A stretch of 64,000 nucleotides of DNA from Ylistrum balloti (Eukaryota). A program made the position numbers and the translations under genes. The stretch covers positions 558,001 through 622,000 of the forward strand of contig NW_026782277.1 of the NCBI RefSeq assembly GCF_031769215.1, written 5' to 3'. Under the pieces are notes generated by a model. The model was not told where the DNA came from. It searched no databases and saw only the letters and a list, made by a program, of their open reading frames with translations. How positions within the stretch are numbered: position 1 is the first letter of the stretch; every line of letters starts with the position of its first letter. This document shows positions 6,750-64,000 of this stretch, in pieces.

Positions 6750-10388
<3,639 letters not shown>

Positions 10389-11490: not shown

Positions 11491-14145
11491 ATTTACTAAG
11501 GTACCTAGATAAGGATCAATCTGTCTTAGCGGGTTTTCCCTTATTTCAGGATTTTCTTTTTATTTGATTATATGAATATTTACAAGATGTATAATATATA
11601 TAGCCCGTAATAAGAATTTTACAACGTGTTGTCAGGAGACGCTTAGAAAAAAAACAAAGAGGCAATTAGGACCATTCATTTTTTTTTTATTTTATGAGCC
11701 TGATTTACCTATCGAAACACGAACGATACTGCTATTTGACAACAATATTTTACGGGTCTGAAGTATCGAATTTATATATATATGTACATCTATTAATTTC
11801 CTGTCGTCAGAGTTACAATATTTACTAATTTGATATATTGGAAGAAACAAAAACGGACGATTTGCAAATACAGCACGAGGGTCTTTGAAAACAAAACTGC
11901 TTTCTCATTTTCGTTTTATTGTAGTTATGGAGTAAAGGCTAATGTTATCGTGTATTTTGTTTTGATTTGTTTATTTGTGTTATCACAAAGGTCAAGTGTA
12001 AACTTGTTTTGATGGCGCCAATTATAAACACTTTAAAGCACCAGCGTACTGCAATGTCATAACTAGCATATATGTATATCAACACGACGTTCCACCCAGA
12101 ACATCATAACAACGGGGAGCTTAATCAGTGATGTAGATTTAGGTCAAATACGGTCATTTCTTATCTGTGTATCTACTTTACTCAGATTTTGAAATCTTGG
12201 CAGGGGACATCACGAACTCTGTGTTATCTGGCATCGCACACCCGTCTGTCTGTTTAACACAAATATGACCTCAGTGTACACTGAGTATAGTAAGGTAGCA
12301 TGGTATCACCAGACATCATTCCTGTGCAGAATACTGTAAATTATCATATTTTGGTAAGACTCATTCGTGTAAATCTAGATTTGTCGTGAATAAGAACTTG
12401 AATATGTACTTCTTGTGTAAAACTAGAAATAAGAAATCAACTGTATTGGAAGACAATTAAAATATTTATCACTGAAAAATGGAAACAAGAATTTCTCTTT
12501 AAATGATTAAAAATTCGATCATATTTGTATATGATACGCAAGGACTACGTGAATATTAAGGAATGACAACACCAGGCTGCAAATCAATTAAGATAGCCAT
12601 TTATTTGTATATTTGGTCAGTTTTCTGAAATCGGCAATGTTGCTTTCACACTGCAATCTTAAAAGTTGGATTTCATGTCAGATTTGGAGCTGTTCTAAAG
12701 TACAAATTAAGGTTTGCATCGATATGGCAGACAACCATCTAAGCTAGAATATTTTGAAATAAGGAATGAAGTCAGGTTGATTTTTTTATTTTCAACACCC
12801 ACTCCCCACTATCATTCAGGTTGATATAACTGAACCATTTAAAATGTCTAAATATTGGAAAGCAAATATAGATATGTTTTGTGTGTTTATACGATTAGCA
12901 TTCAAGCATACAGAATACACAGTATCTTTATTAAGGGAAATCTAAGCTGTAAAAAGGTTACGTACTTAACCAATTAAAAACATTTTCTTATTCTTCAAAA
13001 TTTTAGTTACGTAACATTCAGCAAGATATTTTGCATATCGTTTATTGAAAATAAATATAATTAAAAAGATAGTGTTCAATATAAGGTTGGTTGTGATTGA
13101 ATGTCGTTTCTCGGATATTTTGTTGTATTGTAATTTAAGCTGCTAAGAACTGGAATGTGTTGTTCTTTTACATAATGCGTCAATATATTAGTATATTCCT
13201 GTGTTGTTTGGCTATTTAATTGCAAATGTCTCCGCTGTCTTGGAAGTAATATGCTTAGCTAGCCCCGTAACAGTAAAAGTATCATAATACAAGATGTACT
13301 GATAGTCGAACAAACAAAAAGGAAGATATAAAGTTTAAAATTTTTAATGCATTATTTTCCCGTGACTAAAATGCATGCGATTAAGATTTCTCAATCAGAT
13401 ATGGGACAAATCGATATAAATAAAATCAGATCAAAATGGGTTTTTTTTCTGATCGGTGGCGAGGATGTTTAAATCGGCACAAAATTTGAAACCCCATATA
13501 GCTACAGCGGGTTGTCATTGATATTACAATTACAATTAATAACGTGTTCTGTGGGCCAAAACTGATCTGCAGGTAAAAAAATGAATTTGTCAGCACTTTA
13601 TTTTTGTGGATTTGAAAGTCCTTTTCATAATAGGGGTACATTGAAACTTTGTAAATTATAAATGACATACAATTGTTCCAAACCGGTCTGATGCCATGTT
13701 ATATAGAAGTGGTTTAGATAGAGAATCTCGTACGTTTGTCTCATTTTTAGTAAATCTTTTACACATTCTGTCCTTGTGATTTTCGAATTCGATCAAGGTC
13801 ATTCATTTCAAAACGTTACCAGAACTCAGTCTTAGCAAGCTTCAAGCCGAATAACAGCATCATGTCATTTATTGTGAGAAGTCGTTTGAGTACATTTGAC
13901 ACATTTAACACATTTGACATATGTGATCTTAACCTGGACCAAGGTCATTCATTTATATATTATTGGTAGTCCTTTATCATAGCATGCTACATGTTTTGAT
14001 TAGTACCCCTGGCATTTATGTTATGAAATAAAGTCTTTAGAATATTTTGACTTTATTTGATCCCCGTGCTATTTCTGCAGCGGTTATAGTTTGTATTTAG
14101 GGAAAACCCATTGTGAAATATTCTATTTACTTCTGTGATATGAAG

Positions 14146-14280
14146 CTGGACGTGTTTGCTGTTCGTTAGTTTGACTGTTATTTCCACTCTTGTATACCTG
14201 TTTCTCATTTGGACACGTGACATTACGTACTTGGATTGACCACGATTTGCATGGCATATGTCGTCGATGTCACAGAAATC
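14146..14280 (-). repeat. Dispersed SINE-like repeat copy
   Basis: The reverse complement matches the 3' two-thirds of the family (CATCGACGACA...ATGAGAA.AGGTATACAAG...AAACACGTCC). Confidence 0.55.
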
Positions 14281-15418
14281 TCTATCGAAAATATCTTTAC
14301 TTCATCTTCATACTTGTATACATGGTTTTATATTGTTACATATCAACAAAAATGTCAAAACTTATAATTTAGCAATGTAAACTTGCAGAATCGTTGTTAA
14401 CCGGGGTCACCTTGACGTATCTCTGTTGCTATCTAATTGAATAATTGAGCAACATAATGGATGCCCATTTGATGGCATACCATCTAAATCAATTAGAATA
14501 ATGTGTTCTGATAAGGACGCAAACATGACAGCAAGGATCGAGATCTTCCTCGGATATCTGAGATACAGAACACAGAAGACAACGAACATTGAACAGTATA
14601 GAATGATATGCCTCGTAATTTCGCCTGAGGTAGCATCGACCGTTGCTTTACACATCGAATTATTATAGTTCCATACGGTAAATTACTTACATTTCGCGTG
14701 GGATATATTTCCATATTAATGCACTAGGACAGTCAATCGCGAATTCAAATCTTTCGCTATTATTTCTAAGGAAAACAATTCTAAATTGCATCAATTTCAC
14801 TAGGTTACCGATATCGGAGTCGCGTTGAGTTCGTGCCTCTAATGGCTAATTATTCACGAGTTTGAAGTTATTTCAAGATCAGAATGCGCGAAATCCTGTA
14901 TTTGCGAGTTTGACTGGAGAGTTAAGTCTGTGAAATAAAGTATACGGTAAATGTAAATTATCTGCCGCGTTCAACATTTAAGCTCTGTAAGTCTACATCG
15001 AATGCTATAGAATGTAAAGATTAAGGAAAAAACCCAAAGCTTTACAAAAAAGTAATTTAATTTCAGAAGAAAACAAAATCACAAACAGCAAATTACAATA
15101 CGATGACAATGTATTACATTTGATAGAGATATAAGGAGATTGCAGTTTAACAGAAACAACACAAAAATATTGAATGAATATAACATGAATTTGCATGCTA
15201 CATTTTATGATTTTATGCTTATTTGTAAACACTCTATGCTGTTTTTTTCAAAAAGAGTATTTTGTTCATGTCAAACACGTCGAACAAAAAATAATATTCT
15301 ATGTATTGCAAGACTTAGGTGTAGTTGTATTCCCAATATCAATATCTTGGCAAATATCAGTAAGTCATTTAATTTGTTGGACAGCTAACGAGTTAACATT
15401 ATAGCTGATAGTTAGTCT

Positions 15419-18380
<2,962 letters not shown>

Positions 18381-18960: not shown

Positions 18961-21900
18961 CCTAAAATGTTTTGCAGGGTAACGAGAGATAACGATTCAC
19001 ACACCCATCACGTTGTTAGAACACACTAAGACCTTTCTGTCGTATATATTGCCATAACAAATTATATAATGTATGTATATTGAGTTCAAAGTCCAACCTA
19101 CTTCTGTTCATGTATTTTTCTAACCTTAGATAAACAACGTTGAAAACCATTTGTTTTATAATGCAAAACTCTTTTGAACGGCCATTGTTGATTGTAATAC
19201 AGAACTGCTTATGAAATTGTCCACTTTTTAAAGAACAAAACATTGCCTTCAAATGTTATATTGTGTTATGCTACATTACCACTTTTTTCAAAAATAAAAT
19301 AAGATCGCATCCCTAAAATGGACGGAGTCGTCCTGAAGGTTTCCGGATAGGTAATCAATTCTATACAAATTTTATCTCAATTCTAAAACGTACTTTTAAG
19401 AAGAAAAAAACCCCGCAATACATGTACATCTCATGGTTCTGAGATTTTGAAAGTGTTTAGTTTTATATTTACTGAAAGTTTCAAGGCATACTAAATTAAA
19501 TCCTGTTTTACATTTACATATTTAAAACTTTTCGTTGTTTTAATTTTACTGCATTAGAGCTGATTTTTTTGTTTATTTTTGTGTCGTTTTTTTTCTTCAA
19601 TCTATTTTTAATGTTCTAATTTTTCAACCCTGACGATCCATGTTTTATTGATAAGCGATTGTAATAATAAAAAAAAATATATATATGTCCTATTTTCAGG
19701 CCACAATTCAAAATGATTAGTATGACATTTGATATCATTTTACCTTGCAAGTGGTATCGAAGATTGTTCAAAACATAACAGAAAATATGACGATTCAACT
19801 TTTGCATAACTTGGTTTTATTCTTTTGCATAGGCCGAATAACTAATAAAACTGACTCAAAAATTTTCCCTCTACAGAAATATTCAGTGTAGCCAATGTCA
19901 TAAGTATGGATATTTGAATTGTGAGTTAAGAAGATTCAAATTATATTAGGCGAGATATATTGGGAAAGCTACAACGAATTACGTTTATCCAGAAAATTCA
20001 TAAACATAATATTTGGCGATTTTGATAGAATGTTGAGTAGCAGTATGAGGTCATTGTTTGAATGTAAGTTTGTTGAACATTACACAAGAGTATGGCAAAG
20101 CTCGTGAGTAGACCAAAGTCCACCAGAAGAGAGAGGTAATCCTTGTCTCTTTTAACCGATAAAACATCATCCATTACGCCTTATCTATCTTTATTGACGT
20201 TTGAAGGACATGAAACCAATAACGGACAAAAGACAGACTGTAAAAGACTAATACCAAGGTTACAGTATAGAGGACAGTTCGGTTTTATTTGTATTAAGTA
20301 AGTCATGTTTTCGGATAATGCATTGCTCAGTCACGTGGATACCTGGTTCAACTCGCATGAACACAATGTTGTACCTGCATGCAATTCAGTGCCCTAAATC
20401 ATTTAGCTGTATGTTTCTGTCATGGTCAGAGGATGTCTGTTAACACGAAAATGAAGAAACATAATCGAGAAATCTATTTAAGAAAAAGGGATTTATTTTT
20501 AACGTCGATTCAAACAAAGCAGACTGATATTGTGTAGTTCCCTAAAATTTGCGCAGGCTTTTGATATATTTGAAGTGTGACATCATGTCATATTTCCAAT
20601 GTTCATATCTGTAGGAAATAAAACCTTTTTCTAATACATGCAAAAGTGGCGATAGAATATGTTTCAGAACGCATGATATTATTACAAGATTCTTTATTAA
20701 TGTGCGATATTTCTTTCGGATTATTTAAACTTTCAACTTAACATTTCCGACTGAGTTCTTTAATCAAACGGTCTGATATAAAAATTATCTTTGTGACAAT
20801 TTATCATTCATTGCCAAACAGCACCACAGAAATAAATCAATACCTCTATCAAATAAATATTTTTGAAAAACTGAAATAGATTGATCTCAAATTTTAGTAC
20901 AAAGCTTCTGGATTTAAAATAACACAGATTATCAGTTATCCTGACTTTTCTGTATATCCCTGTATCAGTCGTTCATTTAACATCATGATTCTTGCTTCTT
21001 TGCTGTCCATACATATTACCGTTATAGAAAGGCAAATTCATCTTATTTTTTAACAGAGAATGATGTTTTTCATAAAAGAAATATGGGTCGCCAGAAAAAT
21101 AGCTCTATCATAAAATAAACAACATTTACCCTTCCTGACCCAATATGATAACGTTATCATGTCATCAAACCCAAGCAAGACGGATAATCCAGTTTGGCAG
21201 AATTTTTTCAGCAAGTCTTTACAATCCTAGAGTTCTTGTGAAATATACATTAATCTTACTGTTTCTTTCGTCACTCATTCATTGTTAGTAATTCTTAATG
21301 CGATGACGTCATGATGATTATGACGCGGTAGTTATTGTGAACGTTTTGCCCGAAGTCGCCTATTTATATCTAATATCGTATTGTTCGTCATAATGTTATT
21401 GGATACACAAAGGTATTGTACAATACATTGGAATAAAAACATACATTTGCTAAACAACTTTAACGCAGCAAGAGTGAGAATTCCTAGCAGAAGTAGTATC
21501 GTTCTTTGTGTTGGAGCAAATATCCCGAAAAGCATGATATATGTCTTGTACATGGATTAATTTCTAAGGTTTAATTGTTTTCCATAATTAACACTGAACA
21601 CATATTCTTAGTTGCTGTTATGGCTGTTTTATTAAGACAAAAACGAAAACATTAAAACTATATTCATATTGTGTTCGAGAAGAACACAAATAATTGATGT
21701 AATTTAACACATTGCTTGGCTCTACTGTGTCTAATTCTAAACTTGTATCAAAATGTGTTATGCTGTAACATCGCCTCAGTTAAACATAATGAACTTACTA
21801 AAACTGAATTTACATTTTAATGGTTTAGACATGATTTTTTTTATTTAGTGATATGGTTTTGGTATCATATGTAACATATAGAGGCTGTACTTAGCACAAT

Positions 21901-24355: not shown

Positions 24356-29079
<4,724 letters not shown>

Positions 29080-29508
29080 CTATAGCATAACAAAGATATA
29101 ACAGAGGTAATAACTCTTTGTAGCATGGAAAACATAAATCATTGATAATGTGACATAGAACAAAAAGAGAAAAGGAAAAAAAACATTCGTAGAGTAGCTG
29201 AAAAAAACCCAGTCAGTATTGATTTAGCATAGCCAAGCTAATGAGTTTCCTGTAAAATCATCAATTTTTGTGGAGACTTATTTTCGTTTAAAATCTTATT
29301 CTACGAATGCTCATGAACGGAAATAATTTATTAATTCGTGTGCACCCACCTATCGAATATTCAACAGTGACGTTTGAAGAAATAAAACAACATGAAAATA
29401 GATATTTCTACAGTTAGTAAGTTTATAAAAAGTTACTTTCTAATGATCATGTAATAGCAAAATATACCTCAGTCAGTCAGGAAAGAACGTAAGGTGCAAT
29501 AATTCAAA

Positions 29509-30129
29509 TCTAGATAAGACATATCTAGAGAAGACATATTTATTGAAGGCATATCTAGAGAAGACATATCTAGAAATGACATATTATTGAAGACATATCT
29601 AGAGAAGACATATATGGAGAAGACATTTCTAGAGAAGCGTATCTAGAGAAGACATATCTAGAAATGACATATTTATTGAAGACATATCTAGAGAAGACAT
29701 ATATGGAGAAGACATTTCTAGAGAAGCGTATCTAGAGAAGACATATCTAGAAATGACATATTTATTGAAGACATGTATGGAGAAGACATTTTTAGAGAAG
29801 CGTATCTAGAGAAGACATATCTAAGTACGACATATCTAGAGAAGACATATCTAAGTACGACATATCTAGAGAAGACATATCTAAGTACGACATATCTAGA
29901 GAAGACATATCTAAGTACGACATATCTAGAGAAGACATATCTAGAGAAGACATATCTAGAGAGGACATATTTAGAGAAGACATATCTAGAGAGGACATAT
30001 TTAGAGAAGACATATCTAAGTACGACATATCTAGAGAAGACATATCTAGAGAAGACATATCTAAGTACGACATATCTAGAGAGGACATATTTAGAGAAGT
30101 AATACCTAAAGAGAACATATCTAGAGAAA
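29509..30129. repeat. 15-bp minisatellite (GAGAAGACATATCTA)n, about 41 units, in predicted intron 1 of copy C
   Basis: Directly visible, with variant units forming ~89-bp and 30-bp higher-order blocks. Confidence 0.95.
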
Positions 30130-36763: not shown

Positions 36764-37687
36764 ATGGGTCTCTCCGCATACTGTGTAGTGACGTCCTTAA
36801 CTGTCTTTGTATTAAGAGGTAAGTCTTGTCATCATGACTCGAGTGATTATATATCATACACTGTCGTATTTGCAGCACTGAAAAATAATTTTTCGTCGGG
36901 CTGAATTTCCATGGCTTTTTTTTCAAAATATTTATTCCATGGACATTTGATTTAGTGGATAAATAAAAATATAAACAAATCTACTGAAGTAATATTTAAC
37001 AGATCCTCAACGAATGAATTTATACATTAAAAATATCAACGAAAGTAAAACAACAAGGACATGTAAATTCAATTGATTCTATATTCAAGGGTATATTCCC
37101 ATTATCACGATTTAGTGAAAGAACTCGTCAACAGACGGAAAACCTCGTAAAACTGGGGTTCAAAAGATGCAAGATGATGAGAATTATTCGGAAGTTTTTT
37201 GGTCGTCAAAGTGATGTTATTGAGAGAAATTGTATTTCTCTGTGCGGTGTGGAGGTAGACGTGATTCATGCTCGTTAGTTTGCCAGTTGGATATATTGTT
37301 ATACCATGTTCTTTTTTGGGAACGTGACATTACTTACTTTGATTAACCAAGACTCACATGGCGGGTGTCGTCCATGAAGCAGAAGACGCTACTCTTCCAG
37401 AACACCATGTCTTTTTACTTGTACTTTTTTCAGGAGCTTCCGAGTAAACATCATTGTATATCTTGTCCTAGGGTTTTTAATCTAGGTTTGGATTTTTGTT
37501 ATATTGACATTTTGGTATTTTTTTAGATGTTTCATACACTACACAATTTAATCGTGTTTCGTTTATGGGGATTCATTAACTTATACTGTTAAGTTATCCA
37601 TTAAAATACTATCATAAAACAACATAAGATTCTTCATTTAATTACAGAAATGAAGATAGGTCGTGATATCAGTATGCTTTGGCCTAG

Positions 37688-37721
<34 letters not shown>

Positions 37722-40700
37722 ATGTAATTGATAGATCAAAACAATCCTTATGAATATAATATATACGGAACTGAACTGTATCTAATGCATAATTAGATGC
37801 CAAATGTCAAAAGTCATTTAAGTATACTAATCTACGGCTACTTTTTACATATGAGAGCTATGATAATTGTGAGGCATTAAGAGTTCATACCCTTTTGAAC
37901 TCTTAATTCTTTTGCAGTTTAGTTTTTTGTCCGGTATTTTGTTTGTTAACGTTTCAACTTTGGATCCAGAGTCCATTTCGTTTATTACATCAAAGATGAA
38001 AATAAAAAAATACCAACATGTCGACGTAATTATGATTCAAGGTCAAATTTGATAATACTGCGGCGAAAAATGAATAAAACAAACAGACACAGACACACTC
38101 CTGAAAAAGTACAAGGAAAATAAGACAAAGTGTTCCGGAAGAGTAAACGACAAGACACTGTAAAATTGCAAGGCGTCTGTATGATGCTGTCATAAATACA
38201 AACAACTTTCTAATTGCAATCAAATAGTTGTTGGTGGATATCAGGTTTTGATATTTATGAGTTATTAATTCTATATCAGCAATAAAATCAAAACTAACTG
38301 ATCTGAAGCAAATTTCGTGAGGTGGTAAAATTGAGAAAACAAGCTGCATCCCTTTCATAGCTATCTGTTGTCTTTGTTTGATGTATATAGATTTGCAATA
38401 TGACGGTAACATGCGACATTTGATCAACCTTTTTCCAATGGTTTTACAAAATATCCAATAATCTTTGTCGAATGGATGTTCTTGAATAGCACTTAGTATC
38501 ATTATGAACATACATGCAAGTCTCTCTTTAATAGAAAATAAAAACCCGTAGTTGATCGTAAAGCATAAATCAGTTCTAAAGACATTTCTGTGTGTTTGTG
38601 GGAGATAGGGTTGGGGATAGGGGAGAGGATTATCAGCTGTTTTGTTTATTTTATGTGTACTTGTAATCTACGAATTGTCCGCGAACTGTTATAATTGTAT
38701 GGTCATACTGATTGTGCTATATTTTAATCACGAAAGGAATTGATCATAGATTAGAGATCTATTGAAAATTCAACCACATATGAGGCCAACGAAACTATCT
38801 AATTTTACAGTAATCTGTAGTACAAACTAAAACATCTAATTTTACAGGAAATTTGTAGTACAAACGAAAATATCTAACTTTACAATTTTCAGGACAAACA
38901 AAAATTTCTTTATTTACAGTAATCTGTAGTACAAACTAAAACATCTAATTTTACAGGAAATGTTGTGCAACCATGTTCTGAACTGGGATGTTTCGTCTTT
39001 GTTTGGTTTCAGGTAGACATTAGACAAATGAAAATAGATCTGCTTTACTTGAATTCATATATGTCGCTTCGTTTCTGTTGACACTATCCTTCTATCCGTT
39101 TCGGTGGACACCAGCTATAATGCATGTATGACACTGGCTATTACGAGTTCTTACACACTCTAACAAACTATTACTTTCCATTTAGAGTAAGCAGTCCCTC
39201 TCCCTATAATATCATATTGATATTTCGTTGTAGTTGAAGGCGCGAGATGGATGAACGTTGATGAGGCAGTTAGCAGATCCATCAGACACCTGGAGTTGAT
39301 GAATGAGAAACGATCCATACTGGATACAACTCCAGGGGAAGTTATCAACATAGAACAGGAAACTGACCTCATAGAAAGTGACGCGGTCAACACCATAGAA
39401 GGGTCAAAGGTCATGCGATATTTTGAAACATTCCACGGGATTCCAGTTTACGATTCCATTGCTTCCATAGAGGTCGACAGTGAACACGGTACGTACACCG
39501 GACAAGCATCCGGGCAACTGCTTCAAGACATTCACAATGACGTCACATCCGTAATACCAACTCTGAAGAAAGCTGAGGCTCTGGTACTTGCAAAAATGTA
39601 CTTTGGTGGCGACAGCAACGAGTACAGTAACGAAAAAGTGGAACTAGTGATATATCCTGTAGGACATGTGGCAGCATTAGCTTACAAAATATCATTTATC
39701 GCATTCAGGAATGACAATATAGCTAGACGTCGTTTCTTTCTCAATGCAAATACTGGAAAACTCTTGAAAGAAGTGAATTTACTTCCGTCATTTCAGGCAA
39801 AAACTACAGGAGGTAATACCAAGATTGGTAAATTAGAATACGGTAAATCTATGCCCTTTCTGAAAGTAAGAAAAACAGGAACAAATTGTACGTTAGCCAA
39901 CGATAAAGTGAAAGTCTATGATCTTCACCATGGTAAAAGATTGAATAAGGGGGACCGTCCATTTTCCTTTGACTGTAATGAAGGAATTTCAGACGAGGGC
40001 AATGGGGCATTTTCTCCACTCAGCGATGCTTATTTCTACGCGAACAGAGTTTTCAAAATGTACGAGGAACTAGTGCATGCGCCTGCAATTAAAGAACAGC
40101 CAATTCAAATATGGGTTCACTACGGTGAAAATGCTATCGTAGCCCAGTTTTCTGGTCCAATGCTCCTGTTTGGGGATGGCCGGAAGGATATTTTCTACCC
40201 GATGGTTTCTGCAGACGTCCTAGGTCACGAAATGACACATGGATTCGTAGAAGAACATTCAGATCTTGAGTACAGTGGTCAGTCTGGAGCAGTAGATGAG
40301 TCGTTTGCGGACGTTGCCGGAGAGGCGGCCGAAGAATTTATCTTTGGAAGTCACGACTTCAAATCTGGTGAAGACATCTCCATGGGTTACACAGTTCGGG
40401 ATATGTGTAATCCAGAAACAGACAGTAGGTCCATTGACCATGTTAATGACTTCAATGACGATTTAGATGTCCACTACACTAGTGGTATTTTCAACAAAGC
40501 GGCGTGCTTGCTGGTAACATCGGACGAATTCGATATATTTAAAGTGTTTCAGATCTTTGCGCATGCCAATCGTTTTTATTGGCATCCAACATCGAATTTC
40601 AGCGGGGCCGCTTGTGGTATTGCAAAAGCCGCTTATGACCTAGGACATAATACCGACGAGATAGCAGCTGCGTTTGAAAACGTTGGTGTTGAAATCTGCT

Positions 40701-41032
40701 CAATGGAGAAATATACAAGAACAATTCACACAGATATCACTATAAAAAGTCTCCAGGCAAAGGGTGACGAAAAAATAGTATTTAAATTCAATATCAGGTC
40801 CGGAAAAAGCTTCTTGATCTATACTATGAATGGGGATGGAGATATCGATGTAACTATAGATTCGAAACGCAAATTAAGAGGTGCAGCCCCGCTGTATTCA
40901 TCGGATTCAAAGGGAAACCTAGAAATGATCAACGTTGATTTAAAACTGATTCGAAAAGGCTACATCACTTTAAAACCAAAGAAGAAAGGAATGTTTTCAG
41001 GCGTGAAATTTGACTTACGTATCCAACACTGA
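36764..41032 (+). CDS. Secreted M4-family (thermolysin/vibriolysin/pseudolysin-like) zinc metalloprotease, 617 aa, two coding exons
   Basis: join(36764..36818,39234..41032) = 1854 nt. Exon 1 is MGLSAYCVVTSLTVFVLR+G with a GTAAGT donor. Its phase 1 matches the acceptor tttcgttgtag at 39233, giving ...LR-VEG-ARWMN. Motifs: FTP-like RYFETFHGIPV, PepSY-like ELVIYP..ALAYKISF, mature start TTGGNTKIGKLEYG, HEMTH (40226-40240), QSGAVDESFAD (third Zn ligand), DVHYTSG (catalytic His) and a C-terminal PPC-like GDGDID segment. Confidence 0.9.
37300..37412 (-). repeat. Dispersed SINE-like repeat copy in the M4 gene intron
   Basis: The reverse complement reads GGTGTTCTGGAAGAGTAGCGTCTTCTGCTTCATGGACGACACCCGCCATGT, the family core. 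Confidence 0.6.
38797..38960. repeat. 37-38 bp minisatellite (ATCTAATTTTACAGTAATCTGTAGTACAAACTAAAAC), ~4.5 units, in the M4 intron
   Basis: Unit starts at 38797, 38834, 38872, ~38906 and 38943. Confidence 0.8.
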
Positions 41033-45188: not shown

Positions 45189-49445
<4,257 letters not shown>

Positions 49446-56600: not shown

Positions 56601-57659
56601 TCATTCGTATGTATCTCGCTTGTTTATATATGTATATATAAGGCCTTCATGATATTGCTGTATTTTTCATAATATCATGTATTGTGGATCCTACTAAAAT
56701 CAAACATGATTTTGTACAGTCAAACCTGTCGTAAAGTTCATCTTTATACAAAGGTCTATAAAGATCACATTTTGGTTCACTGTGTAAGGCAATTCATATT
56801 ACTTTTCTCTGCTCCTTTGACTGCCATTTGTAGACAGGATTGACTGTTTATTTGAAATCTAGGGCTAGTACACTTCTCAATTTGATTTTGGTGTTTCATT
56901 CGATAGATTAACGGTCTTATTAGTCGTCTTCAGCATTTCAAACTTAAGGCCATATTTGTCGCTGATAAATCCTTAACGGACGAAATAGCTGTATGATGGA
57001 GTTTAGTCTAATTTTGAATTTGTATTCAAGCTATTATTTTTTTCGTATATCAAATACACATAAGGATAGCTAATAAGGATTCATTTTAATGACAAGGGAC
57101 TGATTATACTGACAAATAACTCGTTACAATGACAAATAACTCATCATACTGACAAAATGACAAATTATACTGACAAAAATATTGTTACACTGACAAATAG
57201 CTCGTCATACTGACAAAATGACCAATGACACGGGGAAAATGACTCTTTACACAGACAAATGACTCATCATACTGACAAAATGACCAATTATACTGACAAA
57301 TGACTCATCATACTGACAAAATGACCAATTATACTGACAAATGACTCATCATACTGACAAAATGACCAATTATACTGACAAATAACTCGTTACACTGATA
57401 AATGACTCCTTATACTGACATGACAAGCTTGTATTCTGTAACGAATGATGAACCTGCGAGCATGTATTACATGTATCACCCTCTTACCTGATTTAGGATA
57501 TGAACACAATAGGACGTCGTCTTCATGGAACTGCAGGGAAGATATTTCAGCTAGTGTGTCACTTATATTTCCAGACATCTCTGGATGAAATCGCCTACCT
57601 TTGTGTTGCTTAAAACCTATTGTGTTTCCATCGTTATCTACCACAGTTATTACATCCAT
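50684..57659 (-). CDS. Cytosolic sulfotransferase (SULT family, Sulfotransfer_1 type), 298 aa
   Basis: Exons (minus): 57488-57659, 54904-55215, 54083-54192, 51773-51959, 50684-50799. Total 897 nt, GT-AG, phases consistent. Motifs: SYPKSGTHW (5'-PSB loop), ATHL (catalytic His), RNPKDVFCS (3'-PB), YEDL, RKGVIGDWK and KQKLTVKQNE (KxxxTVxxxE dimer motif). Confidence 0.92.
53745..53910 (+). repeat. Dispersed SINE-like repeat copy in a sulfotransferase intron
   Basis: CCAGGTGTTTCGGAATAGAAAGCGTTTTCTGATTCATCGCCGACAAC...CATCAAACACGTC matches the family. Confidence 0.55.
56717..56846. mobile_element. 130-bp Tc1/mariner-type MITE
   Basis: 14-bp terminal inverted repeats CAGTCAAACCTGTC / GACAGGATTGACTG (1 mismatch). 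TA lies at the left flank. The right flank is TT, so the TSD is imperfect. Confidence 0.6.
57105..57420. repeat. 41-bp minisatellite (two ~20-bp ATACTGACAAA subunits) in sulfotransferase intron 1
   Basis: ATACTGACAAAATGACCAATTATACTGACAAATGACTCATC is repeated, with degenerate edges. Confidence 0.9.
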
Positions 57660-59290: not shown

Positions 59291-60450
59291 ATGGCTTGTG
59301 GTACAAGATAAAGGATCACAAATGCAGTTGCAAGCTGGCCAGGATCAGTCCATAATGCCAGAATCTTCAGGGGTCGAATATATGTTTCAATTTGAAAAAT
59401 GGTAAATCCAGTAAATCAAATGATTTAGTTCTTCATAATAAATCCATAATGCCAGAATCTTCAGGGGTCGAATATATGTTTCAATTTGAAAAATGGTAAG
59501 TAAATCCAGTTCATAAACGATACAAATGATTTACCGTTCTCGTACATAATAAATCTTAAGTTAAAAGTTATTTTTGATGTAAAATCGAGATTATCAAAAA
59601 CTGCATTGGTGATTACTAGGAATGACAATCTGAGACGTAGTGTAACGGTATATCTACAACATGGTTAGCATATTTTTTATTCATTCTTTATTTAAATACT
59701 ACAAAGTTGTTCATTCTGGCATCTTCACTCAAATCCACTCATCTAACTGCTGATACTGCAATGTTATTCTATTGGTTGACGAGTTGAGCCTATTAAAGAT
59801 GTCACAGTAACATTGGCCTGTGCTGTTTTGCACAATATTGGGATTGCCAGAAATGACATTGAAGGCCTTCCTGAAGAAGATGAGAGTGGATTGTATTCCC
59901 ATTGTCCCTCGCGTTTTGAAAATTTAAGGGAAAAATATGTAAGAACATACCGTTGAGTGTAAATTAATCTTTTCATCCTAGTGCACTACTAGCGCACGCG
60001 ATAAAGACTAAAAGTTCACACGAAAAAGATTACAGGTGCACAAAACCAACACAGGTGATACCACAATTTCCCGTACAGATGAATGGGCCGTTCCAGAGCT
60101 ACTTCAGCAACCAGAATACCTCATCTGATGAAACCCAACAGGTAAAGTAGCCATTTCATCAGCAGGGGTCTTAGTGCACTTCTAGTTTACATGTAGTCTA
60201 TTTTTCATGCACTTGTCTTAACCGTGTGCACTACAAGTGAACTTTGTGTTGATTCAACGATTAGTCTATTCAACTCTTATAGCGTTATTTACCTTCTTCA
60301 TAAAGGAATTCTCAATCGGGTCGCTTAAGCCGTCGCAAAAATCCCTCAGCTTAAGGAATATTTATACAAGGCAAATTTGAGGAAATCTCAAGGATGGGAA
60401 CCTTAACCTGAGGAAATCTCAAGTTGAGATTGTTGAATACAAGCGGGGCC
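59291..60450 (+). mobile_element. Decayed PIF/Harbinger DNA transposon (HARBI1-like transposase 3' half plus probable right terminus)
   Basis: Translates to RITNAVASWPGSVHNARIFR (59312-59371) and RVEP...ACAVLHNIGI...YVRTYR* (stop ends at 59956), both Harbinger transposase hallmarks. It has an in-frame stop and frameshifts. The subterminal CTCAAG/TTGAG repeats end in GCGGGGCC at 60450. Confidence 0.75.
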
Positions 60451-60909
60451 AGGCAACCTTTAGTAATGCAAAAGTAGTTTCCAACTTAATGAATATGTAG
60501 GCGATACGTGTCTGGCGTTATTGAAGTAGTGACGTATAGAGTATTACTTCCAAGTCTCCCAAACTCTACGTTTGCAAGACCTGAGCAGACGCCTCTGAAT
60601 GCTGGAATTCAATAGCGTATATTTCGGTAAGTAACCCTTGTACAATGTCATCGTTGGCAACATATAATCAGATAATTGTTATATAGATTCGATCAGTAAC
60701 ATAAAAGTAGTAACATTATATAAACAATATTATTCAATAGTTTTTTACATACGTTTCTAAAAAAACTAATGGGATTTATTCAATAATCGTCATCGGATTT
60801 GTTTCAAATAGCTTGATTTTCAAGAATCTTCCTTAAATTATACGTTGCATATTGCAAGGCTTAGAAGAATTAATCTTCAACTAAATGTAAATTTATGTTC
60901 CGATTTCTA

Positions 60910-60990
60910 CAGTCGAACCTCGTTATCTCGAAGTCCGCGGTATCAAGGGAAAACTTCGAGATAACCGAATTCGATTTAATCGAGTTCGAA
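60910..60990 (+). mobile_element. Left end of a Tc1/pogo-type MITE
   Basis: TA|CAGTCGAACCTCGTTATCTCGAA followed by TTCGAGATAAC subterminal repeats. No matching right end was found. Confidence 0.45.
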
Positions 60991-61030
60991 TGTGCTGTGT
61001 CAAGTAAAGCAGCGACCAACGAAATGTTTT

Positions 61031-61755
61031 AAATTATTATGATTATTATTATGATAATCTTAACAGCCCGTCAACCCATAAACGATCAACAGGGCCACCA
61101 AACGGTAAAACACAAGGTAAAAGACAACTGTTAAAAATCTTAAATGGGTATGTTAACACAAAATATCAAAATGGTACATCATAGTCTATTATATAGACCA
61201 ACATCTTTCAGGTAATATAGAATTTTTAAAATCTCAACAGTTTCAAAAAGGGTTTTAGACATGTAATGTTACGATAAAACATTCTCGAATAGACAGAAGG
61301 TCGATGCGGTCCAATAAAAATATTTAGCGGTGAATGGCTCATCACATCCTATGAGTCGAGGATTAACTTCGCCTTTCAACAAATAGGAATGTGTAAGGTA
61401 TGTATGACCAATCCGAAGACGGGCCAGGACAACTTCGTCTCGGTGGTTGTCTCTATAGCCTGGAGACCATTCACCGATAAAAGGTGTAACGGAGTGCAAA
61501 TTGTTATTGGGATATGTATTCCATTGCTCCTGCCACTAAGCTTTTAAAATTTGTTCAATAGATGGTTTAAAATCGGTAAAATGAAGTTTGAAAACAACAG
61601 GTGGTAGCGATAAAGCTTCCTTTGCGGCACGATCTGCTTTCTCGTTGCCTGGTATTCCCATGTGCCCAGGAACCCAGCAAAAAACAATACAAACGTTAAA
61701 GGCAAGATCATGATATAGAATTAATGTATTACGAATGGAAATATTTTCTTTTATT
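61031..61755 (-). mobile_element. 5'-truncated non-LTR retrotransposon (I-group-like; RNase H plus C-terminal zinc knuckle), degenerate
   Basis: The minus strand encodes CWVPGHMGIPGNEKADRAAKEAL (RNase H) and EVVLARLRIGHTYLTHSYLL, with stops and frameshifts. A (TAA)n-like tail lies at 61031-61056. Confidence 0.85.
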
Positions 61756-62039
61756 TGTAGCTAAACGTGGGTGTATAGTGTATATACGTCTTTTATGTAA
61801 TATTTTATCTTCTCACAGTATGACATTGATACAATCAAAATCCACGATCACGTGATGGCTTAGAGGACAGGTGTGTTTGTACGTCGGGGATTGTATTCTG
61901 TTGATTATATTTCTCAATTTGTGTCTATTGTCAAAAATTTTTGTCAGTAAGTACTTGGAACTCTTGGTGCATAGATATACGGAACATTGTGTCTGTTCTT
62001 CTGTTTATCGTTGATATATTTGGTTTTCTTTGGAGGACA

Positions 62040-63100
62040 ATGGATAAGCCTACGCACGGACTCACCGTAGACGGAGCGCCGACACGTACATGTACCTCTC
62101 AGGTGAGCGGTGTTGAAACTATTTTGATTACTGAAGACCAAGCTAACATTTATTCATCCCCCGTTCATACTGGAATGAAACGAAATACTCCAGATACTTC
62201 CCCTAGTCCTCATTTTGTGGATAGCGTTTCTAAAAAAGCGCAATTTTCTGATACACCGCCCGGTCACGCCCAGTCTCCCTGGCATTTGGGACACACAGCA
62301 GGGCAGTCTTCTCCACAACCTGATCTCTCTATTAAAACTGATGTGATTAAACGTTTGATTGATGAACTTGTTGGTCCCGTGTCACAATCAGTTGCCCAGG
62401 TGTTGAAGACTACCTTGATAGATGAGTTTCGTCCGATGATCGAGAGCGCTGTAAAAGTGGTTCTGGAATCAAACGACAGTATAGGTCGTTTCATAACTAA
62501 TTGTGTGGACAGCAAAATCCAATCTGATCCGCATCTTGTAGACAGGGAAGCAGAGGTAAAGAAAATAGAGGTACACGAAAAGGAAATCGAGACTGAAAAA
62601 AAGCGATTGATCTGCTTGAAAAGAAAGTTGCAAATCAAACTAGCATTATGGATGAACATGAACAGTACTCGAGAAGAACGTGTTTAAAATTTCTTAATGT
62701 TCCTGTACCTGAAGGACAAACGAGCTCCACATTCGATCCATTAAAAGCTGTACTAAACATATTAAGCAAACTTGATATCGACATGCCTTCTCATGCTATA
62801 TCTAGGTGTCACATCTTAGGTCAAATTACTGATGCCAGAGTAACAATCATCGCCAGGTTTGTTCGTTACTATGACCGGCAGATGGTGTTCGAGAGGAAGA
62901 AAAAGTTAAAAGGCAACGCCCACCGGACTATGATCGTAGAGTCACCGACAAATGATCGTCAGCGAGTTGAACAAACTTCGACGCGACAATAAAATTCATT
63001 CGTTTTGGACAAGAGACGGAATAATTTTTGGAAGGAAGAGAGATCTGCAAAGACACTGGTGTTAAGTGTTCTTCAATCAGCCGTCTAGTTCCAGACTATG
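62040..63100 (+). pseudogene. Frameshifted LINE ORF1-like gene (coiled coil plus RRM-type EQYSRR domain plus WTRDG C-terminus)
   Basis: A coiled coil (EVKKIEVHEKEIETEK) frameshifts into EQYSRRTCLKFLNVP...ISRCHILG...TIIARFVRYYDRQMVFERKKKLKG. A further frameshift leads to HSFWTRDGIIFGRK (63006). No ORF2 follows within the window. Confidence 0.75.
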
Positions 63101-63554
63101 TGTATGTACCGCGCGTAAACTCGAGACATTCTTAACTAAACAAAAAAAATATTTTGTGAAATTCAATGTTTATTATGAATTCTCAATATATATATATTAA
63201 GTAATACTTTCTATATCTCATAAAGCTGGTGAATTGAATTCAATGCTCTGGTAACACGTGGCTATTTGGCGTAACACGTGGCTTTTGTTATTGTTGTCAA
63301 TGAGCCGCACGCGGGCTAGAGGGGCGTGGCCTTAGCTTGTTTACCTTTTTCTATAGTTGTTCAGCGTGGTGTGAATAAAATATATAAAGTTACATGCAGA
63401 GCATTAATATACAAGTGTATATATATATATTAGTAGTAACGCTAGGGTGAATATACAGCCCAAGCTAACCCTACGCTTTTAGCACTTTTTTTTCAACCAG
63501 GGTACGTATGTTGGCCTGAATCTGTATGCAAATGAATACATTTCAAGGGTCACA

Positions 63555-64000
63555 CTTCGGGTACCAGCCCAAGCACATGATATATGTATATATAACTAGA
63601 AAACTATATATATATATATATTGTATTATTATAAGTACATATGCAAATAGCGTACATGGGCTACACATCAATTCTAGTATAAAATATTGGGACCAGTCCA
63701 AAAGTATAGTATGATTTTATTATGTTAAATACTCGGGGTAAACATTGAAGCTCTATATGCAAATCAAGTTTTTGACTCACTGATGTGTCGTATGCGCATG
63801 CTTAATGGGTACCAGCCCCAGTGCATAACTTGTGTTTATACTTTTTTGTTTTGTATTATTATAAATACATATGAACATAGCTTACACTTCAGTTTTAGTA
63901 TAAAGTGTTGGGACCAGCCCAAATGTAGAGTATAATCTTATTATGTTAAATATCCAGGGTAAAAATCGTAGCTCTATATGCAAATCAAGAATTTAGACAC
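63555..64000. repeat. Imperfect ~220-250 bp tandem/satellite repeat running to the window edge
   Basis: GGGTACCAGCCC at ~63559 and ~63807. GCTCTATATGCAAATCAAG at ~63750 and ~63971. Confidence 0.7.

What the first reader, a model, noticed from the sequence alone, without database searches (positions are those of the whole stretch)
36764..41032. Bacterial-type M4 metalloprotease (vibriolysin/pseudolysin-like) as a spliced gene in an animal genome: candidate domesticated horizontal transfer
Seen: an intact 617-aa ORF with the full architecture of gammaproteobacterial secreted M4 proteases (signal, FTP, PepSY, catalytic domain, PPC-like tail). The predicted mature start FQAKTTGGNTKIGKLEYG parallels Pseudomonas LasB AEAGGPGGNQKIGKYTYG. 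HEMTH, the third ligand Glu, the DVH His, the LEY Tyr, the VR Arg, the Ca-binding D/E pattern and both LasB-type Cys pairs (TNC..FDC and GAAC..VEIC) are all present. Established: M4 is mainly a bacterial family and includes Vibrio virulence proteases. Inference: an ancestor acquired the gene from a marine bacterium and kept it as a secreted digestive, antimicrobial or matrix-remodelling enzyme. I cannot tell from the sequence whether orthologues in this lineage have been described.
Basis: partly seen in the sequence, partly recalled or inferred. Interest (0 to 1): 0.9.

Follow-up and report, generated by a model that had tools for sequence, protein, structure and literature searches.

The report
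Scallop M4 protease of bacterial origin
This is a real, intact scallop gene for a secreted zinc protease of a bacterial type, one member of a family that all the main mollusc classes inherited from an ancient bacterial gene transfer, and that origin was already published for the octopus copy in 2018.

Summary
Window 36764-41032 (+) holds a two-exon gene: a 55-nt signal-peptide exon, a 2415-nt phase-1 GT-AG intron, and a 1799-nt exon. The product is identical to the 617-aa RefSeq protein 'elastase-like [Ylistrum balloti]'.

It is a complete pre-pro M4 zinc endopeptidase of the pseudolysin/vibriolysin type. All zinc, catalytic, calcium and disulfide residues are present. The propeptide and the PPC-like tail are seen at fold level but fall below Pfam thresholds.

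It is not contamination. It lies in a 0.94-Mb contig inside a cathepsin-L gene cluster, and that arrangement is conserved in Pecten and Argopecten. Its GC content matches neighbouring host exons. Among scallops dN is 0.14-0.26 while dS is saturated.

Named relatives come from bivalves, cephalopods, gastropods and a chiton. They form one clade that excludes 87 bacterial sequences with known organisms (NJ bootstrap 82-94%). The best bacterial identity is 32-39%. A single ancient bacteria-to-mollusc transfer is therefore the best reading, but it is far older than scallops and the donor cannot be resolved.

The idea is not new. Liu et al. 2018 listed the octopus orthologue (ZnMP1) as an ancient HGT gene expressed in hepatopancreas. 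The scallop copy is a new member of a known kind.

The parts
36764..36818 (+). Exon 1: start codon plus 18 codons + 1 nt encoding a hydrophobic signal peptide. It ends at a GTAAGT donor (phase 1).
   Evidence: Residues 1-18 of P0001 match 100%. Mean Kyte-Doolittle hydropathy is 1.54 for residues 2-18 versus -0.48 for residues 25-60.
36819..39233 (+). Single spliceosomal intron: 2415 nt, GT-AG, phase 1, GC 0.325. It contains a 37-nt tandem repeat at 38792-38956.
   Evidence: An intron of the same phase and the same place (within the signal peptide) occurs in Pecten, Argopecten, Octopus sinensis and Tegillarca. The acceptor is also seen in a fifth pectinid-like genomic contig, L010.
39234..41032 (+). 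Exon 2: the rest of the CDS (residues 19-617) and the stop codon. GC is 0.42 and GC3 is 0.405.
39248..39790 (+). N-terminal propeptide (about residues 24-204) with an FTP-like plus PepSY-like fold. It is the predicted intramolecular chaperone and inhibitor. It is followed by a low-confidence linker (residues 203-225) where the mature N-terminus is predicted.
   Evidence: Pfam gives PepSY 0.0011 and FTP 0.053, both sub-threshold. The pro-elastase alignment starts at ORF residue 50. Foldseek matches the MCP-02 propeptide chain 3nqz_A with TM 0.82. pLDDT is below 50 at residues 203-225.
39821..40252 (+). Catalytic domain, N-lobe (Pfam Peptidase_M4, residues 215-358). It includes the first Cys pair (C237, C266) and the HExxH motif at 40226-40240.
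40259..40690 (+). Catalytic domain, helical C-lobe (Pfam Peptidase_M4_C, residues 361-504). It carries Y365, zinc ligand E374, Ca-site acidic residues, R407, H432 and C479. The partner Cys507 lies just beyond, at 40697-40699.
   Evidence: Foldseek gives TM 0.90-0.92 to vibriolysin MCP-02, PlM4P and LasB.
40721..41029 (+). C-terminal beta-sandwich tail (about residues 515-617) with a PPC-like (pre-peptidase C-terminal) fold.
   Evidence: Pfam PPC E = 0.19, below threshold. BLASTP colinearity with the PPC tail of a Collimonas M4. G552 and G554 are conserved across the alignment. Foldseek match to 5sv5: TM 0.67, E 2.9e-4. pLDDT is about 84-92.
24971..29079 (-). Neighbour: upstream cathepsin-L-type gene (Inhibitor_I29 + Peptidase_C1). 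Only part of its span is delimited here.
   Evidence: The gene called in L005 at 1-2316 maps to window 26764-29079 and runs on. The exon at 24971-25396 hits Peptidase_C1 at 2.3e-28.
45189..49445 (+). Neighbour: downstream cathepsin-L-type gene (328 aa; Inhibitor_I29 + Peptidase_C1).
   Evidence: L005 18426-22682, offset 26763. A homologous exon lies at 48533-48844.

Best explanation
The locus is a functional nuclear gene of the scallop Ylistrum balloti. It encodes a secreted pre-pro zinc endopeptidase of MEROPS family M4, pseudolysin/vibriolysin type.

It descends from a bacterial (proteobacterial-type) gene that entered the molluscan germ line once, before the living mollusc classes diverged. 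The gene then gained a eukaryotic signal-peptide exon separated by a phase-1 intron, drifted to host base composition, duplicated into at least two old paralogue clades, and has since been inherited vertically.

Inferred mechanism, from homology to LasB and MCP-02:
- The signal peptide directs the protein into the secretory pathway.
- The FTP/PepSY propeptide folds and inhibits the catalytic domain until it is cleaved autocatalytically near residue 205.
- Zinc is held by H350, H354 and E374.
- E351 activates the water molecule.
- Y365 and H432 stabilise the transition state.
- Two disulfides and a calcium site stabilise the extracellular enzyme.
- The PPC-like tail assists substrate binding or is trimmed off.

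The most likely role is an extracellular digestive protease of the digestive gland. The evidence for that is indirect: the octopus orthologue's cDNA came from hepatopancreas, and the scallop gene sits in a conserved cathepsin-L cluster.

Shown here: gene structure, integration, family membership, residue conservation, purifying selection and distribution across molluscs. Inferred: direction and singleness of the transfer, activation mechanism, and tissue and role.
For: - Identity and gene model.
- M4 membership: Pfam domains above cut-off. PDB phmmer gives pro-elastase 1e-79, MCP-02 about 1e-64, ProA 5e-53 and thermolysin about 1e-20 to 1e-24. The AF2 model has pLDDT 84.4 and pTM 0.88, with Foldseek TM 0.90-0.92 to vibriolysin and LasB, 0.82 to the MCP-02 propeptide and 0.67 to a PPC domain.
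- Catalytic, zinc and Cys residues are kept in 17/17 named mollusc proteins.
- Host integration: a 938,652-nt contig. The order cathepsin L(-) / M4(+) / cathepsin L(+) is shared by Ylistrum, Pecten maximus and Argopecten irradians. The window holds four cathepsin-L-type genes.
- Host-like composition: exon 2 has GC 0.42 and GC3 0.405, against 0.40-0.41 and 0.42 for cathepsin exons. The bacterial relatives have a median GC of 0.63.
- Selection: four pectinid genomic copies have intact ORFs of about 598 codons. dN is 0.14-0.26 and dS is above 2 or not computable. Omega is 0.03-0.15 where it can be computed.
- Distribution: named homologues come from Pectinidae, Pinctada, Ostrea, Tegillarca, Octopus, Argonauta, Haliotis, Pomacea, Patella and the chiton Liolophura. 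No named non-mollusc animal appeared.
- NJ tree (139 sequences, 585 columns, 200 bootstraps): clade A (bivalves + cephalopods) 100%, all named molluscs 82%, with 13 unnamed sequences added 94%. Two of those 13 were checked and lie on eukaryote-like contigs. All 87 bacterial sequences with known organisms fall outside.
- Bacteria: the best identity is 32-39%, colinear over residues 56-611, in a scan of 185,579 species genomes.
- Prior publication of the octopus orthologue as HGT, with hepatopancreas cDNA: PMC6011040.
Against: - The tree is neighbour-joining on Kimura-corrected distances with no outgroup. It is not a model-based ML or Bayesian analysis.
- The nearest bacterial neighbours (Vibrio, Shewanella, Pseudoalteromonas and one Dyella MAG) have under 45% support, so neither the donor nor strict nesting inside a bacterial subclade is demonstrated.
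- Many close sequences are unnamed (ENA/Logan), so their hosts are unknown. Non-mollusc animals could be among them.
- No expression data for the scallop gene were available. L010 turned out to be genomic, not a transcript.
- No AATAAA or ATTAAA was found within 770 nt after the stop codon.
- The digestive role rests on one PCR result in octopus and on gene neighbourhood.
- The AF2 model was built with bacterial sequences in its alignment, so the fold matches are not independent of the sequence homology.
Confidence: 0.75

Rival explanations
1. Several independent transfers: mollusc clade A (the scallop, oyster and octopus ZnMP1 type), clade B (the abalone, limpet, chiton and ark-clam type) and the third unnamed group each came from a separate bacterial donor.
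For: Identity between the clades (30-40%) is no higher than identity to the best bacteria (32-39%). Support for A+B is only 82% in an NJ tree and was 74% in the first tree.
Against: All named molluscs group together to the exclusion of 87 bacterial sequences with known organisms at 82-94%. The same single phase-1 intron within the signal peptide occurs in clade A (scallops, octopus) and clade B (Tegillarca). Both clades contain bivalves and cephalopods, which is the pattern of an old duplication.
Confidence: 0.12
2. Vertical inheritance: M4 is an ancient eukaryotic or metazoan gene that was lost almost everywhere except in molluscs.
For: The family is old and widespread within Mollusca. Unnamed eukaryote-like contigs (L011, L012) and a EukProt transcriptome entry carry relatives.
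Against: No named non-mollusc animal was found among the closest relatives in three large searches. The mollusc proteins keep the complete bacterial vibriolysin-type domain order including the PPC tail. They are much closer to proteobacterial pseudolysin and vibriolysin than to thermolysin-type M4 (272 vs 90 bits), which places them inside bacterial diversity. This reading would need very many independent losses.
Confidence: 0.07
3. Same gene and origin, but the main role is not digestion. It could be an immune or antimicrobial effector, or an extracellular-matrix, shell or byssus remodelling protease.
For: Nothing in the sequence fixes the tissue. Bacterial relatives degrade matrix and host-defence proteins (general knowledge of LasB and vibriolysins). 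The scallop gene's expression was not examined here.
Against: cDNA of the octopus orthologue was cloned from hepatopancreas, though no other tissue was tried (PMC6011040). The gene sits in a conserved cluster of cathepsin-L genes, a protease class prominent in mollusc digestive glands (own knowledge).
Confidence: 0.3
4. Bacterial contamination or mis-assembly rather than a scallop gene.
For: The protein is of bacterial type and most of the CDS is a single long exon.
Against: There is a spliceosomal intron and a signal-peptide exon. The gene lies mid-contig in 0.94 Mb of AT-rich animal DNA with no assembly gaps in the window. The same gene with the same neighbours occurs in independent chromosome-level assemblies of Pecten and Argopecten. 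GC matches host exons. Identity to any bacterium is at most 39%.
Confidence: 0.01

Closest known systems
Octopus bimaculoides ZnMP1 (XP_014767445.1) and the octopus 'horizontally acquired Zn-metalloproteinases' of Liu et al. 2018 (Data Brief, PMC6011040; companion paper in Gene, doi 10.1016/j.gene.2018.05.013, not readable here)
   Same: It falls in the same orthologous clade A as the scallop gene (NJ 100%), with 37% identity and 407 bits over residues 21-611. It has the same M4 domains. The sister species O. sinensis shows the same plan of a signal-peptide exon plus one large exon with a phase-1 intron. It is already interpreted as an ancient bacteria-to-mollusc transfer and is expressed in hepatopancreas.
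   Different: It comes from a different class (Cephalopoda). Octopus has seven listed paralogues, whereas this window holds one. The scallop copy sits in a cathepsin-L cluster, whereas the O. sinensis copy has other neighbours. The scallop orthologues carry only automatic names ('elastase-like', 'Virulence metalloprotease').
Vibriolysin MCP-02 of Pseudoalteromonas (PDB 3nqx, 3nqy, 3nqz)
   Same: It is the best structural match: the catalytic domain has TM 0.90-0.92 at 40% identity, and the propeptide chain has TM 0.82. phmmer gives about 1e-64. The zinc site, both Cys pairs and the pre-pro organisation are the same.
   Different: It is a bacterial, intron-less gene with a bacterial signal peptide. 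Identity is only about 40%. No equivalog-level match was found to any named bacterial enzyme (the NCBIfam ProA model scores 247 bits against a cut-off of 900).
Pseudolysin / elastase LasB of Pseudomonas aeruginosa (PDB 1ezm, 8cr7)
   Same: It is the best sequence match among solved structures (pro-elastase 1e-79, aligned over ORF residues 50-482, propeptide included). The catalytic and disulfide residues align.
   Different: The solved pro-elastase chains end just after the catalytic domain (alignment ends at chain residue 495 of 514), so no counterpart of the scallop's PPC-like tail is present there. It is a bacterial virulence factor, not an animal gene.
Thermolysin (type enzyme of family M4)
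   Same: It has the same family, fold and zinc chemistry (TM 0.74-0.77).
   Different: It is much more distant (about 75-90 bits, 26% identity). It lacks the two LasB-type disulfides (own knowledge).
Other bacterial- or phage-derived secreted enzymes fixed in bivalve genomes, such as phage-type lysozyme (PMC5303276, listed)
   Same: The evolutionary pattern is the same: a microbial hydrolase is captured and retained by bivalves.
   Different: The enzyme family is unrelated, and that transfer is younger and taxonomically narrower.

Membership tests
MEROPS family M4 (thermolysin family) | HExxH zinc motif plus a third Glu ligand 20 residues after the second His | tested here: met
   H350, E351, H354 and E374 are invariant in a 37-sequence alignment and in 139/139 sequences.
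MEROPS family M4 (thermolysin family) | Both Pfam catalytic-domain models above gathering score | tested here: met
   PF01447 scores 80.3 bits (cut-off 22.4) and PF02868 scores 102.8 bits (cut-off 24.4).
MEROPS family M4 (thermolysin family) | Transition-state residues (the Tyr and His equivalent to thermolysin Tyr157 and His231) and the substrate-binding Arg | tested here: met
   Y365, H432 and R407 align with the LasB residues and are conserved in 17/17 molluscs. The residue equivalences to thermolysin come from my own knowledge.
MEROPS family M4 (thermolysin family) | Two-lobe thermolysin fold | tested here: met
   The predicted model (pLDDT 84.4) matches MCP-02, PlM4P and LasB with TM 0.89-0.92 and thermolysin with TM 0.74-0.77. 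This is a prediction, not a solved structure.
MEROPS family M4 (thermolysin family) | Zinc-dependent endopeptidase activity | not testable with these tools
   No biochemical data exist for any scallop copy.
Pseudolysin/vibriolysin subgroup of M4 | Closer to LasB and vibriolysin than to thermolysin-type enzymes | tested here: met
   Scores are 272 bits (pro-elastase), 221 bits (MCP-02 mature chain), 184 bits (ProA) and 75-90 bits (thermolysin).
Pseudolysin/vibriolysin subgroup of M4 | Two conserved disulfide-forming Cys pairs | tested here: met
   C237/C266 and C479/C507 are present and align to the LasB cysteines. They are conserved in 17/17 molluscs. Actual bonding was not tested.
Pseudolysin/vibriolysin subgroup of M4 | N-terminal FTP + PepSY propeptide | tested here: inconclusive
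   Pfam hits are sub-threshold (FTP 13.8 bits against 21, PepSY 19.6 against 24). However, the pro-elastase alignment covers the region and the fold matches the MCP-02 propeptide with TM 0.82.
Pseudolysin/vibriolysin subgroup of M4 | C-terminal PPC (pre-peptidase C-terminal) domain, as in vibriolysins | tested here: inconclusive
   Pfam PPC scores 13.1 bits against a cut-off of 25.9. However, the BLASTP alignment runs into the PPC tail of a Collimonas M4, and the fold matches PPC domain 5sv5 (TM 0.67, E 2.9e-4).
Pseudolysin/vibriolysin subgroup of M4 | Equivalog of a named bacterial enzyme (NCBIfam) | tested here: not met
   The best model, ProA, scores 246.8 bits against a cut-off of 900. The protein is a diverged relative, not an equivalog.
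Horizontally acquired, domesticated gene in an animal | Physically integrated among host genes, reproducibly | tested here: met
   It lies mid-contig in 0.94 Mb, and the cathepsin-L flanks are conserved in three genera.
Horizontally acquired, domesticated gene in an animal | Eukaryotic gene features (spliceosomal intron, host base composition) | tested here: met
   A phase-1 GT-AG intron is shared by five mollusc genes. GC and GC3 equal those of neighbouring host exons.
Horizontally acquired, domesticated gene in an animal | Patchy distribution in the recipient kingdom, with the nearest outgroups in the donor domain | tested here: met
   All named eukaryotic relatives found are molluscs. The next nearest named sequences are Pseudomonadota. 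Limits: many hits are unnamed, and the tree is NJ and unrooted.
Horizontally acquired, domesticated gene in an animal | Identifiable donor lineage | tested here: inconclusive
   Identity plateaus at 32-39% across Lysobacterales, Burkholderiales, Vibrionales and Alteromonadales. The nearest neighbours have under 45% bootstrap support.
Horizontally acquired, domesticated gene in an animal | Maintained by selection and expressed | tested here: inconclusive
   Purifying selection is shown (omega 0.03-0.15, dS saturated). Expression of the scallop gene was not testable here. Only the octopus orthologue has cDNA evidence (PMC6011040).

The most novel reading that the evidence does not exclude
One transfer before the mollusc crown group (Cambrian or earlier) seeded a pan-molluscan, possibly wider, family of secreted M4 proteases. 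The family kept the whole bacterial pre-pro-catalytic-PPC plan for over half a billion years. It shares one signal-peptide intron and split early into at least three paralogue lineages. Unnamed eukaryote-like contigs and a transcriptome of a polychaete parasite (host contamination is possible) hint at members outside Mollusca. This would make it one of the oldest and most widely retained bacterial protease acquisitions in animals, and a core digestive enzyme of the phylum. The published octopus work may already cover part of this reading, but I could not read the main paper.
Probability: 0.4. Interest if true: 0.45.

Novelty: new member of a known kind. Interest (0 to 1): 0.3.

Why it matters
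It is a clean, well-supported example of a bacterial secreted protease that became a normal animal gene. It has a host signal-peptide exon, an intron, host codon composition, conserved synteny and strong purifying selection.

Bivalves are constantly exposed to Vibrio species whose own M4 proteases are virulence factors. Telling the host's endogenous M4 from bacterial ones therefore matters for annotation (names such as 'Virulence metalloprotease' on scallop genes mislead), for metagenome decontamination, and for reading protease activity in shellfish disease studies.

For evolution, the family offers a datable, phylum-wide marker of an ancient transfer. The basic claim, however, was already made for octopus in 2018.

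Tried and rejected
- Literature: eight word searches on HGT, M4, thermolysin, pseudolysin, molluscs and scallops found nothing on endogenous mollusc M4 genes (one search failed on a term that was too short). Only an accession-number search found the octopus paper. The companion Gene paper is not held.
- Expression evidence: I hoped the 2-kb Logan contig L010 (P0005) was a transcript. It carries the intron acceptor, so it is genomic. It therefore shows intron conservation but not expression.
- Missing record: P0002 (Mizuhopecten) has no contig on record, so it could not be used for synteny or dN/dS.
- Alignment: a MAFFT L-INS-i run timed out, so I used --auto.
- Spurious ORFs: the first version of the second tree placed a 'bacterial' sequence among the scallops. 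That sequence and one other (L023, L065) were wrong-frame longest ORFs from high-GC loci with no similarity to M4. I removed them and recomputed the tree.
- Pfam on ORFs inside the intron and on other long ORFs of the window found nothing, except cathepsin exons and a minisatellite read as 'pentapeptide repeats'.
- No tRNA genes or Rfam families occur in the window.
- No AATAAA or ATTAAA lies within 770 nt downstream of the stop codon, so the 3' end of the transcript is undefined.
- Contamination, pseudogene and scallop-specific-transfer readings were considered and rejected for the reasons given under the rival explanations.

Full report
**1. What is there**

The window is AT-rich animal DNA (GC 0.31-0.41) with no tRNA genes or Rfam families. 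The ORF at 39251..41032 (+), 593 codons counted from its first ATG, is by far the longest in the window.

- Exon 1 is 36764..36818: the ATG, 18 codons and 1 nt, ending at a GTAAGT donor.
- The intron is 36819..39233: 2415 nt, ending in AG.
- Exon 2 is 39234..41032.

The sum is 617 codons. The protein search returned a 617-aa entry at 100% identity, 'elastase-like [Ylistrum balloti]' (P0001). The window therefore comes from the saucer scallop, and the gene model already exists in RefSeq. The locus is mid-contig in JAUZWB010001256.1, which is 938,652 nt long.

Procedure note: my by-reference searches used exon 2 alone (window:39251-41029 or window:39236-41029). Whole-protein analyses used the database's own P0001. 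I did not search with a self-joined model. Inside one script exon 1 was joined to the first 90 nt of exon 2, for each of five species, only to test the splice junction against the annotated proteins.

**2. What the protein is**

- Pfam finds Peptidase_M4 and Peptidase_M4_C well above threshold.
- Against solved structures the best hits are P. aeruginosa pro-elastase (1e-79, aligned from the propeptide to the end of the catalytic domain), vibriolysin MCP-02, a PlM4P peptidase and Legionella ProA. Thermolysin, bacillolysin and aureolysin are far weaker at 1e-19 to 1e-24.
- An AlphaFold2 model built on a 37-sequence alignment is confident (pLDDT 84.4, pTM 0.88). The only long low-confidence stretch, residues 203-225, is where the propeptide meets the mature enzyme.
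- Foldseek matches three parts separately: the catalytic domain to MCP-02 and LasB (TM 0.89-0.92), the N-terminal 190 residues to the MCP-02 propeptide chain (TM 0.82), and the C-terminal 105 residues to a pre-peptidase C-terminal (PPC) domain (5sv5; TM 0.67, E 2.9e-4).
They are in the right order, and BLASTP to a PPC-bearing Collimonas enzyme is colinear over residues 71-586. I accept them at fold level and mark them 'inconclusive' for strict Pfam membership.
- NCBIfam gives no equivalog (ProA model 247 bits against a cut-off of 900).
These are H350, E351, H354, E374, Y365, R407, H432, the acidic positions D346, E382, E385 and D393, and Cys237, Cys266, Cys479 and Cys507. My own recollection of LasB numbering assigns those four acidic positions to the calcium site.
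- The zinc, catalytic and Cys positions are kept in all 17 named mollusc homologues.
- Exon 1 encodes a hydrophobic leader, with mean hydropathy 1.54 against -0.48 just downstream.

**3. It is a host gene, not contamination**

- Neighbours. The gene is flanked by cathepsin-L-type genes (Inhibitor_I29 + Peptidase_C1) on both sides. A sulfotransferase gene lies beyond. The window holds four cathepsin-L-type genes in all.
- Synteny. The same order, cathepsin L(-) / M4(+) / cathepsin L(+), is found in the chromosome-level assemblies of Pecten maximus and Argopecten irradians.
- Gene structure. All three scallop genes, the Octopus sinensis orthologue and the Tegillarca granosa homologue have the same plan. 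Each has a 12-20-codon first exon, one phase-1 GT-AG intron of 2.2-15.5 kb within the signal peptide, and one large exon. A fifth pectinid-like genomic contig shows the same acceptor.
- Composition. Exon 2 has GC 0.42 and GC3 0.405, like the neighbouring cathepsin exons (0.40-0.41 and 0.42). The bacterial relatives have a median GC of 0.63.

**4. Selection**

Four pectinid genomic copies all have uninterrupted reading frames of about 598 codons. Pairwise Nei-Gojobori estimates give dN of 0.14-0.26. dS is above 2 or too saturated to compute. Where omega can be computed it is 0.03-0.15, and it is lowest in the catalytic domain. This is strong purifying selection, but the saturation means the numbers are rough.

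**5. Distribution and origin**

An exhaustive profile-free search of 1.84 billion cluster representatives found 8514 M4 relatives. Six clusters score 359-467 bits. After those comes a plateau of hundreds of sequences at or below about 300 bits.

Cluster look-ups named the close ones. They are Pinctada, Ostrea edulis, Octopus bimaculoides and Argonauta. A second group holds Haliotis (two paralogues, including a GenBank 'metalloprotease' from H. discus hannai), Pomacea, Patella, the chiton Liolophura, a second Pinctada gene, Tegillarca and a second Argonauta gene.

I built a neighbour-joining tree with 139 sequences, 585 columns and 200 bootstraps. Support values were (an earlier 239-sequence tree agrees):

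| Group | Bootstrap |
|---|---|
| Pectinidae | 100% |
| Clade A bivalves | 96% |
| Clade A (bivalves + cephalopods) | 100% |
| All 17 named mollusc sequences (clades A + B) | 82% |
| The above plus 13 unnamed sequences | 94% |

Two of those unnamed sequences sit on gene-sparse contigs 0.24-2.5 Mb long, one of them with a reverse-transcriptase ORF nearby. They are therefore eukaryote-like. One is a EukProt transcriptome entry. A search started from this third group found another octopus paralogue but no named non-mollusc animal.

All 87 bacterial sequences with known organisms lie outside this clade. The nearest are Vibrio, Shewanella, Exilibacterium, Pseudoalteromonas and one Dyella MAG, but support is below 45%. 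In a scan of one genome for each of 185,579 prokaryotic species, the best matches are only 32-39% identical. They come from the Rhodanobacter/Dyella/Lysobacter group, Collimonas/Undibacterium, Vibrio and Pseudoalteromonas, and they are colinear over residues 56-611. One locus returned by that scan (L069, a Vibrio cholerae contig) was left out of all downstream work.

My reading is one bacteria-to-animal transfer before the mollusc classes diverged, then duplication and vertical descent. The limits are these: the tree is distance-based and has no outgroup, many sequences are unnamed, and the donor is unresolved.

**6. What is already known**

Word searches found nothing. A search by accession number did.

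Liu et al. 2018 (Data Brief, PMC6011040) list XP_014767445.1 as 'ZnMP1'. This is my P0123, the clade-A orthologue of the scallop gene. It is one of seven octopus Zn-metalloproteinases among their twelve genes 'nested within bacteria homologs'. They amplified and sequenced cDNA fragments from hepatopancreas RNA. [quoted passage not shown]

The scallop gene is therefore a new member of a known kind.
- the scallop gene model and its conserved cathepsin-L synteny;
- the shared phase-1 intron;
- the four-class distribution with old paralogue clades;
- the selection estimate.

**7. How it most likely works**

This section is inferred from homology. The leader sends the zymogen into the secretory pathway. 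The FTP/PepSY propeptide acts as folding aid and inhibitor, and is cut autocatalytically near residue 205. The mature two-lobe enzyme binds zinc through H350, H354 and E374 and uses E351, Y365 and H432 in catalysis. Disulfides and calcium stabilise it outside the cell. The PPC-like tail helps bind substrates or is trimmed.

A digestive-gland role is the best guess, from the octopus hepatopancreas cDNA and the cathepsin-L neighbourhood. Immune or matrix-remodelling roles are not excluded.

Noticed in passing
window 7369-7677 (-), 15867-16277 (-), 24971-25399 (-), 48533-48844 (+): Four cathepsin-L-type genes (Peptidase_C1 exons, 57-71% identical to each other at protein level) form a tandem cluster. 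The M4 gene sits inside it, with three copies upstream on the minus strand and one downstream on the plus strand.
   Followed up: partly
window 50684 onward (-): A sulfotransferase gene (Sulfotransfer_1) lies downstream of the second cathepsin-L gene, according to the gene calls on the same contig.
   Followed up: no
window 29508-30128: A 15-nt minisatellite with about 42 copies. It creates long ORFs on both strands that Pfam reads as 'pentapeptide repeats', which is an artefact of the repeat.
   Followed up: yes
window 38792-38956: A 37-nt tandem repeat (4.5 copies) lies inside the M4 intron. The intron also holds a 173-codon minus-strand ORF (37990-38511) with no Pfam hit.
   Followed up: partly
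window 57081-57420: A nested tandem repeat with periods of 20, 41, 61 and 82 nt.
   Followed up: no
window 2001-4000 and 60001-64000: These segments have higher GC (0.41 and 0.37-0.39) than their surroundings, and the first has a strong AT skew (0.18). They contain ORFs of 114 aa (3174-3518) and 248 aa (61941-62687) with no Pfam hit. They may be transposon remnants or exons of unexamined genes.
   Followed up: no
L003 (Tegillarca granosa) 4030-4209 and 5083-5454: Two short M4-like fragments (53% and 31% identical to parts of the intact gene's product) lie about 5-8 kb upstream of the intact Tegillarca M4 gene. They look like the remains of a second, decayed copy.
   Followed up: no
L006 (Argopecten irradians) 13193-15178 and 19376-20896: The Argopecten M4 intron is 15.5 kb long and holds two ORFs of 661 and 506 aa with weak SCAN and zf-CCHC hits. 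These are probably gag-like retroelement insertions.
   Followed up: no
ENA contig of 1,190,152 nt (proteins P0325, P0327, P0328, P0329, P0331) and L012 contig (P0119, P0142): Unnamed eukaryote-like contigs carry several M4 paralogues each (five on one contig, two on another). This suggests local tandem expansion of the family in some unidentified hosts.
   Followed up: no
database names of the orthologues: Scallop and oyster orthologues are auto-named 'Virulence metalloprotease' or 'virulence metalloprotease-like'. These names are inherited from bacterial best hits and are misleading for an endogenous animal gene.
   Followed up: yes
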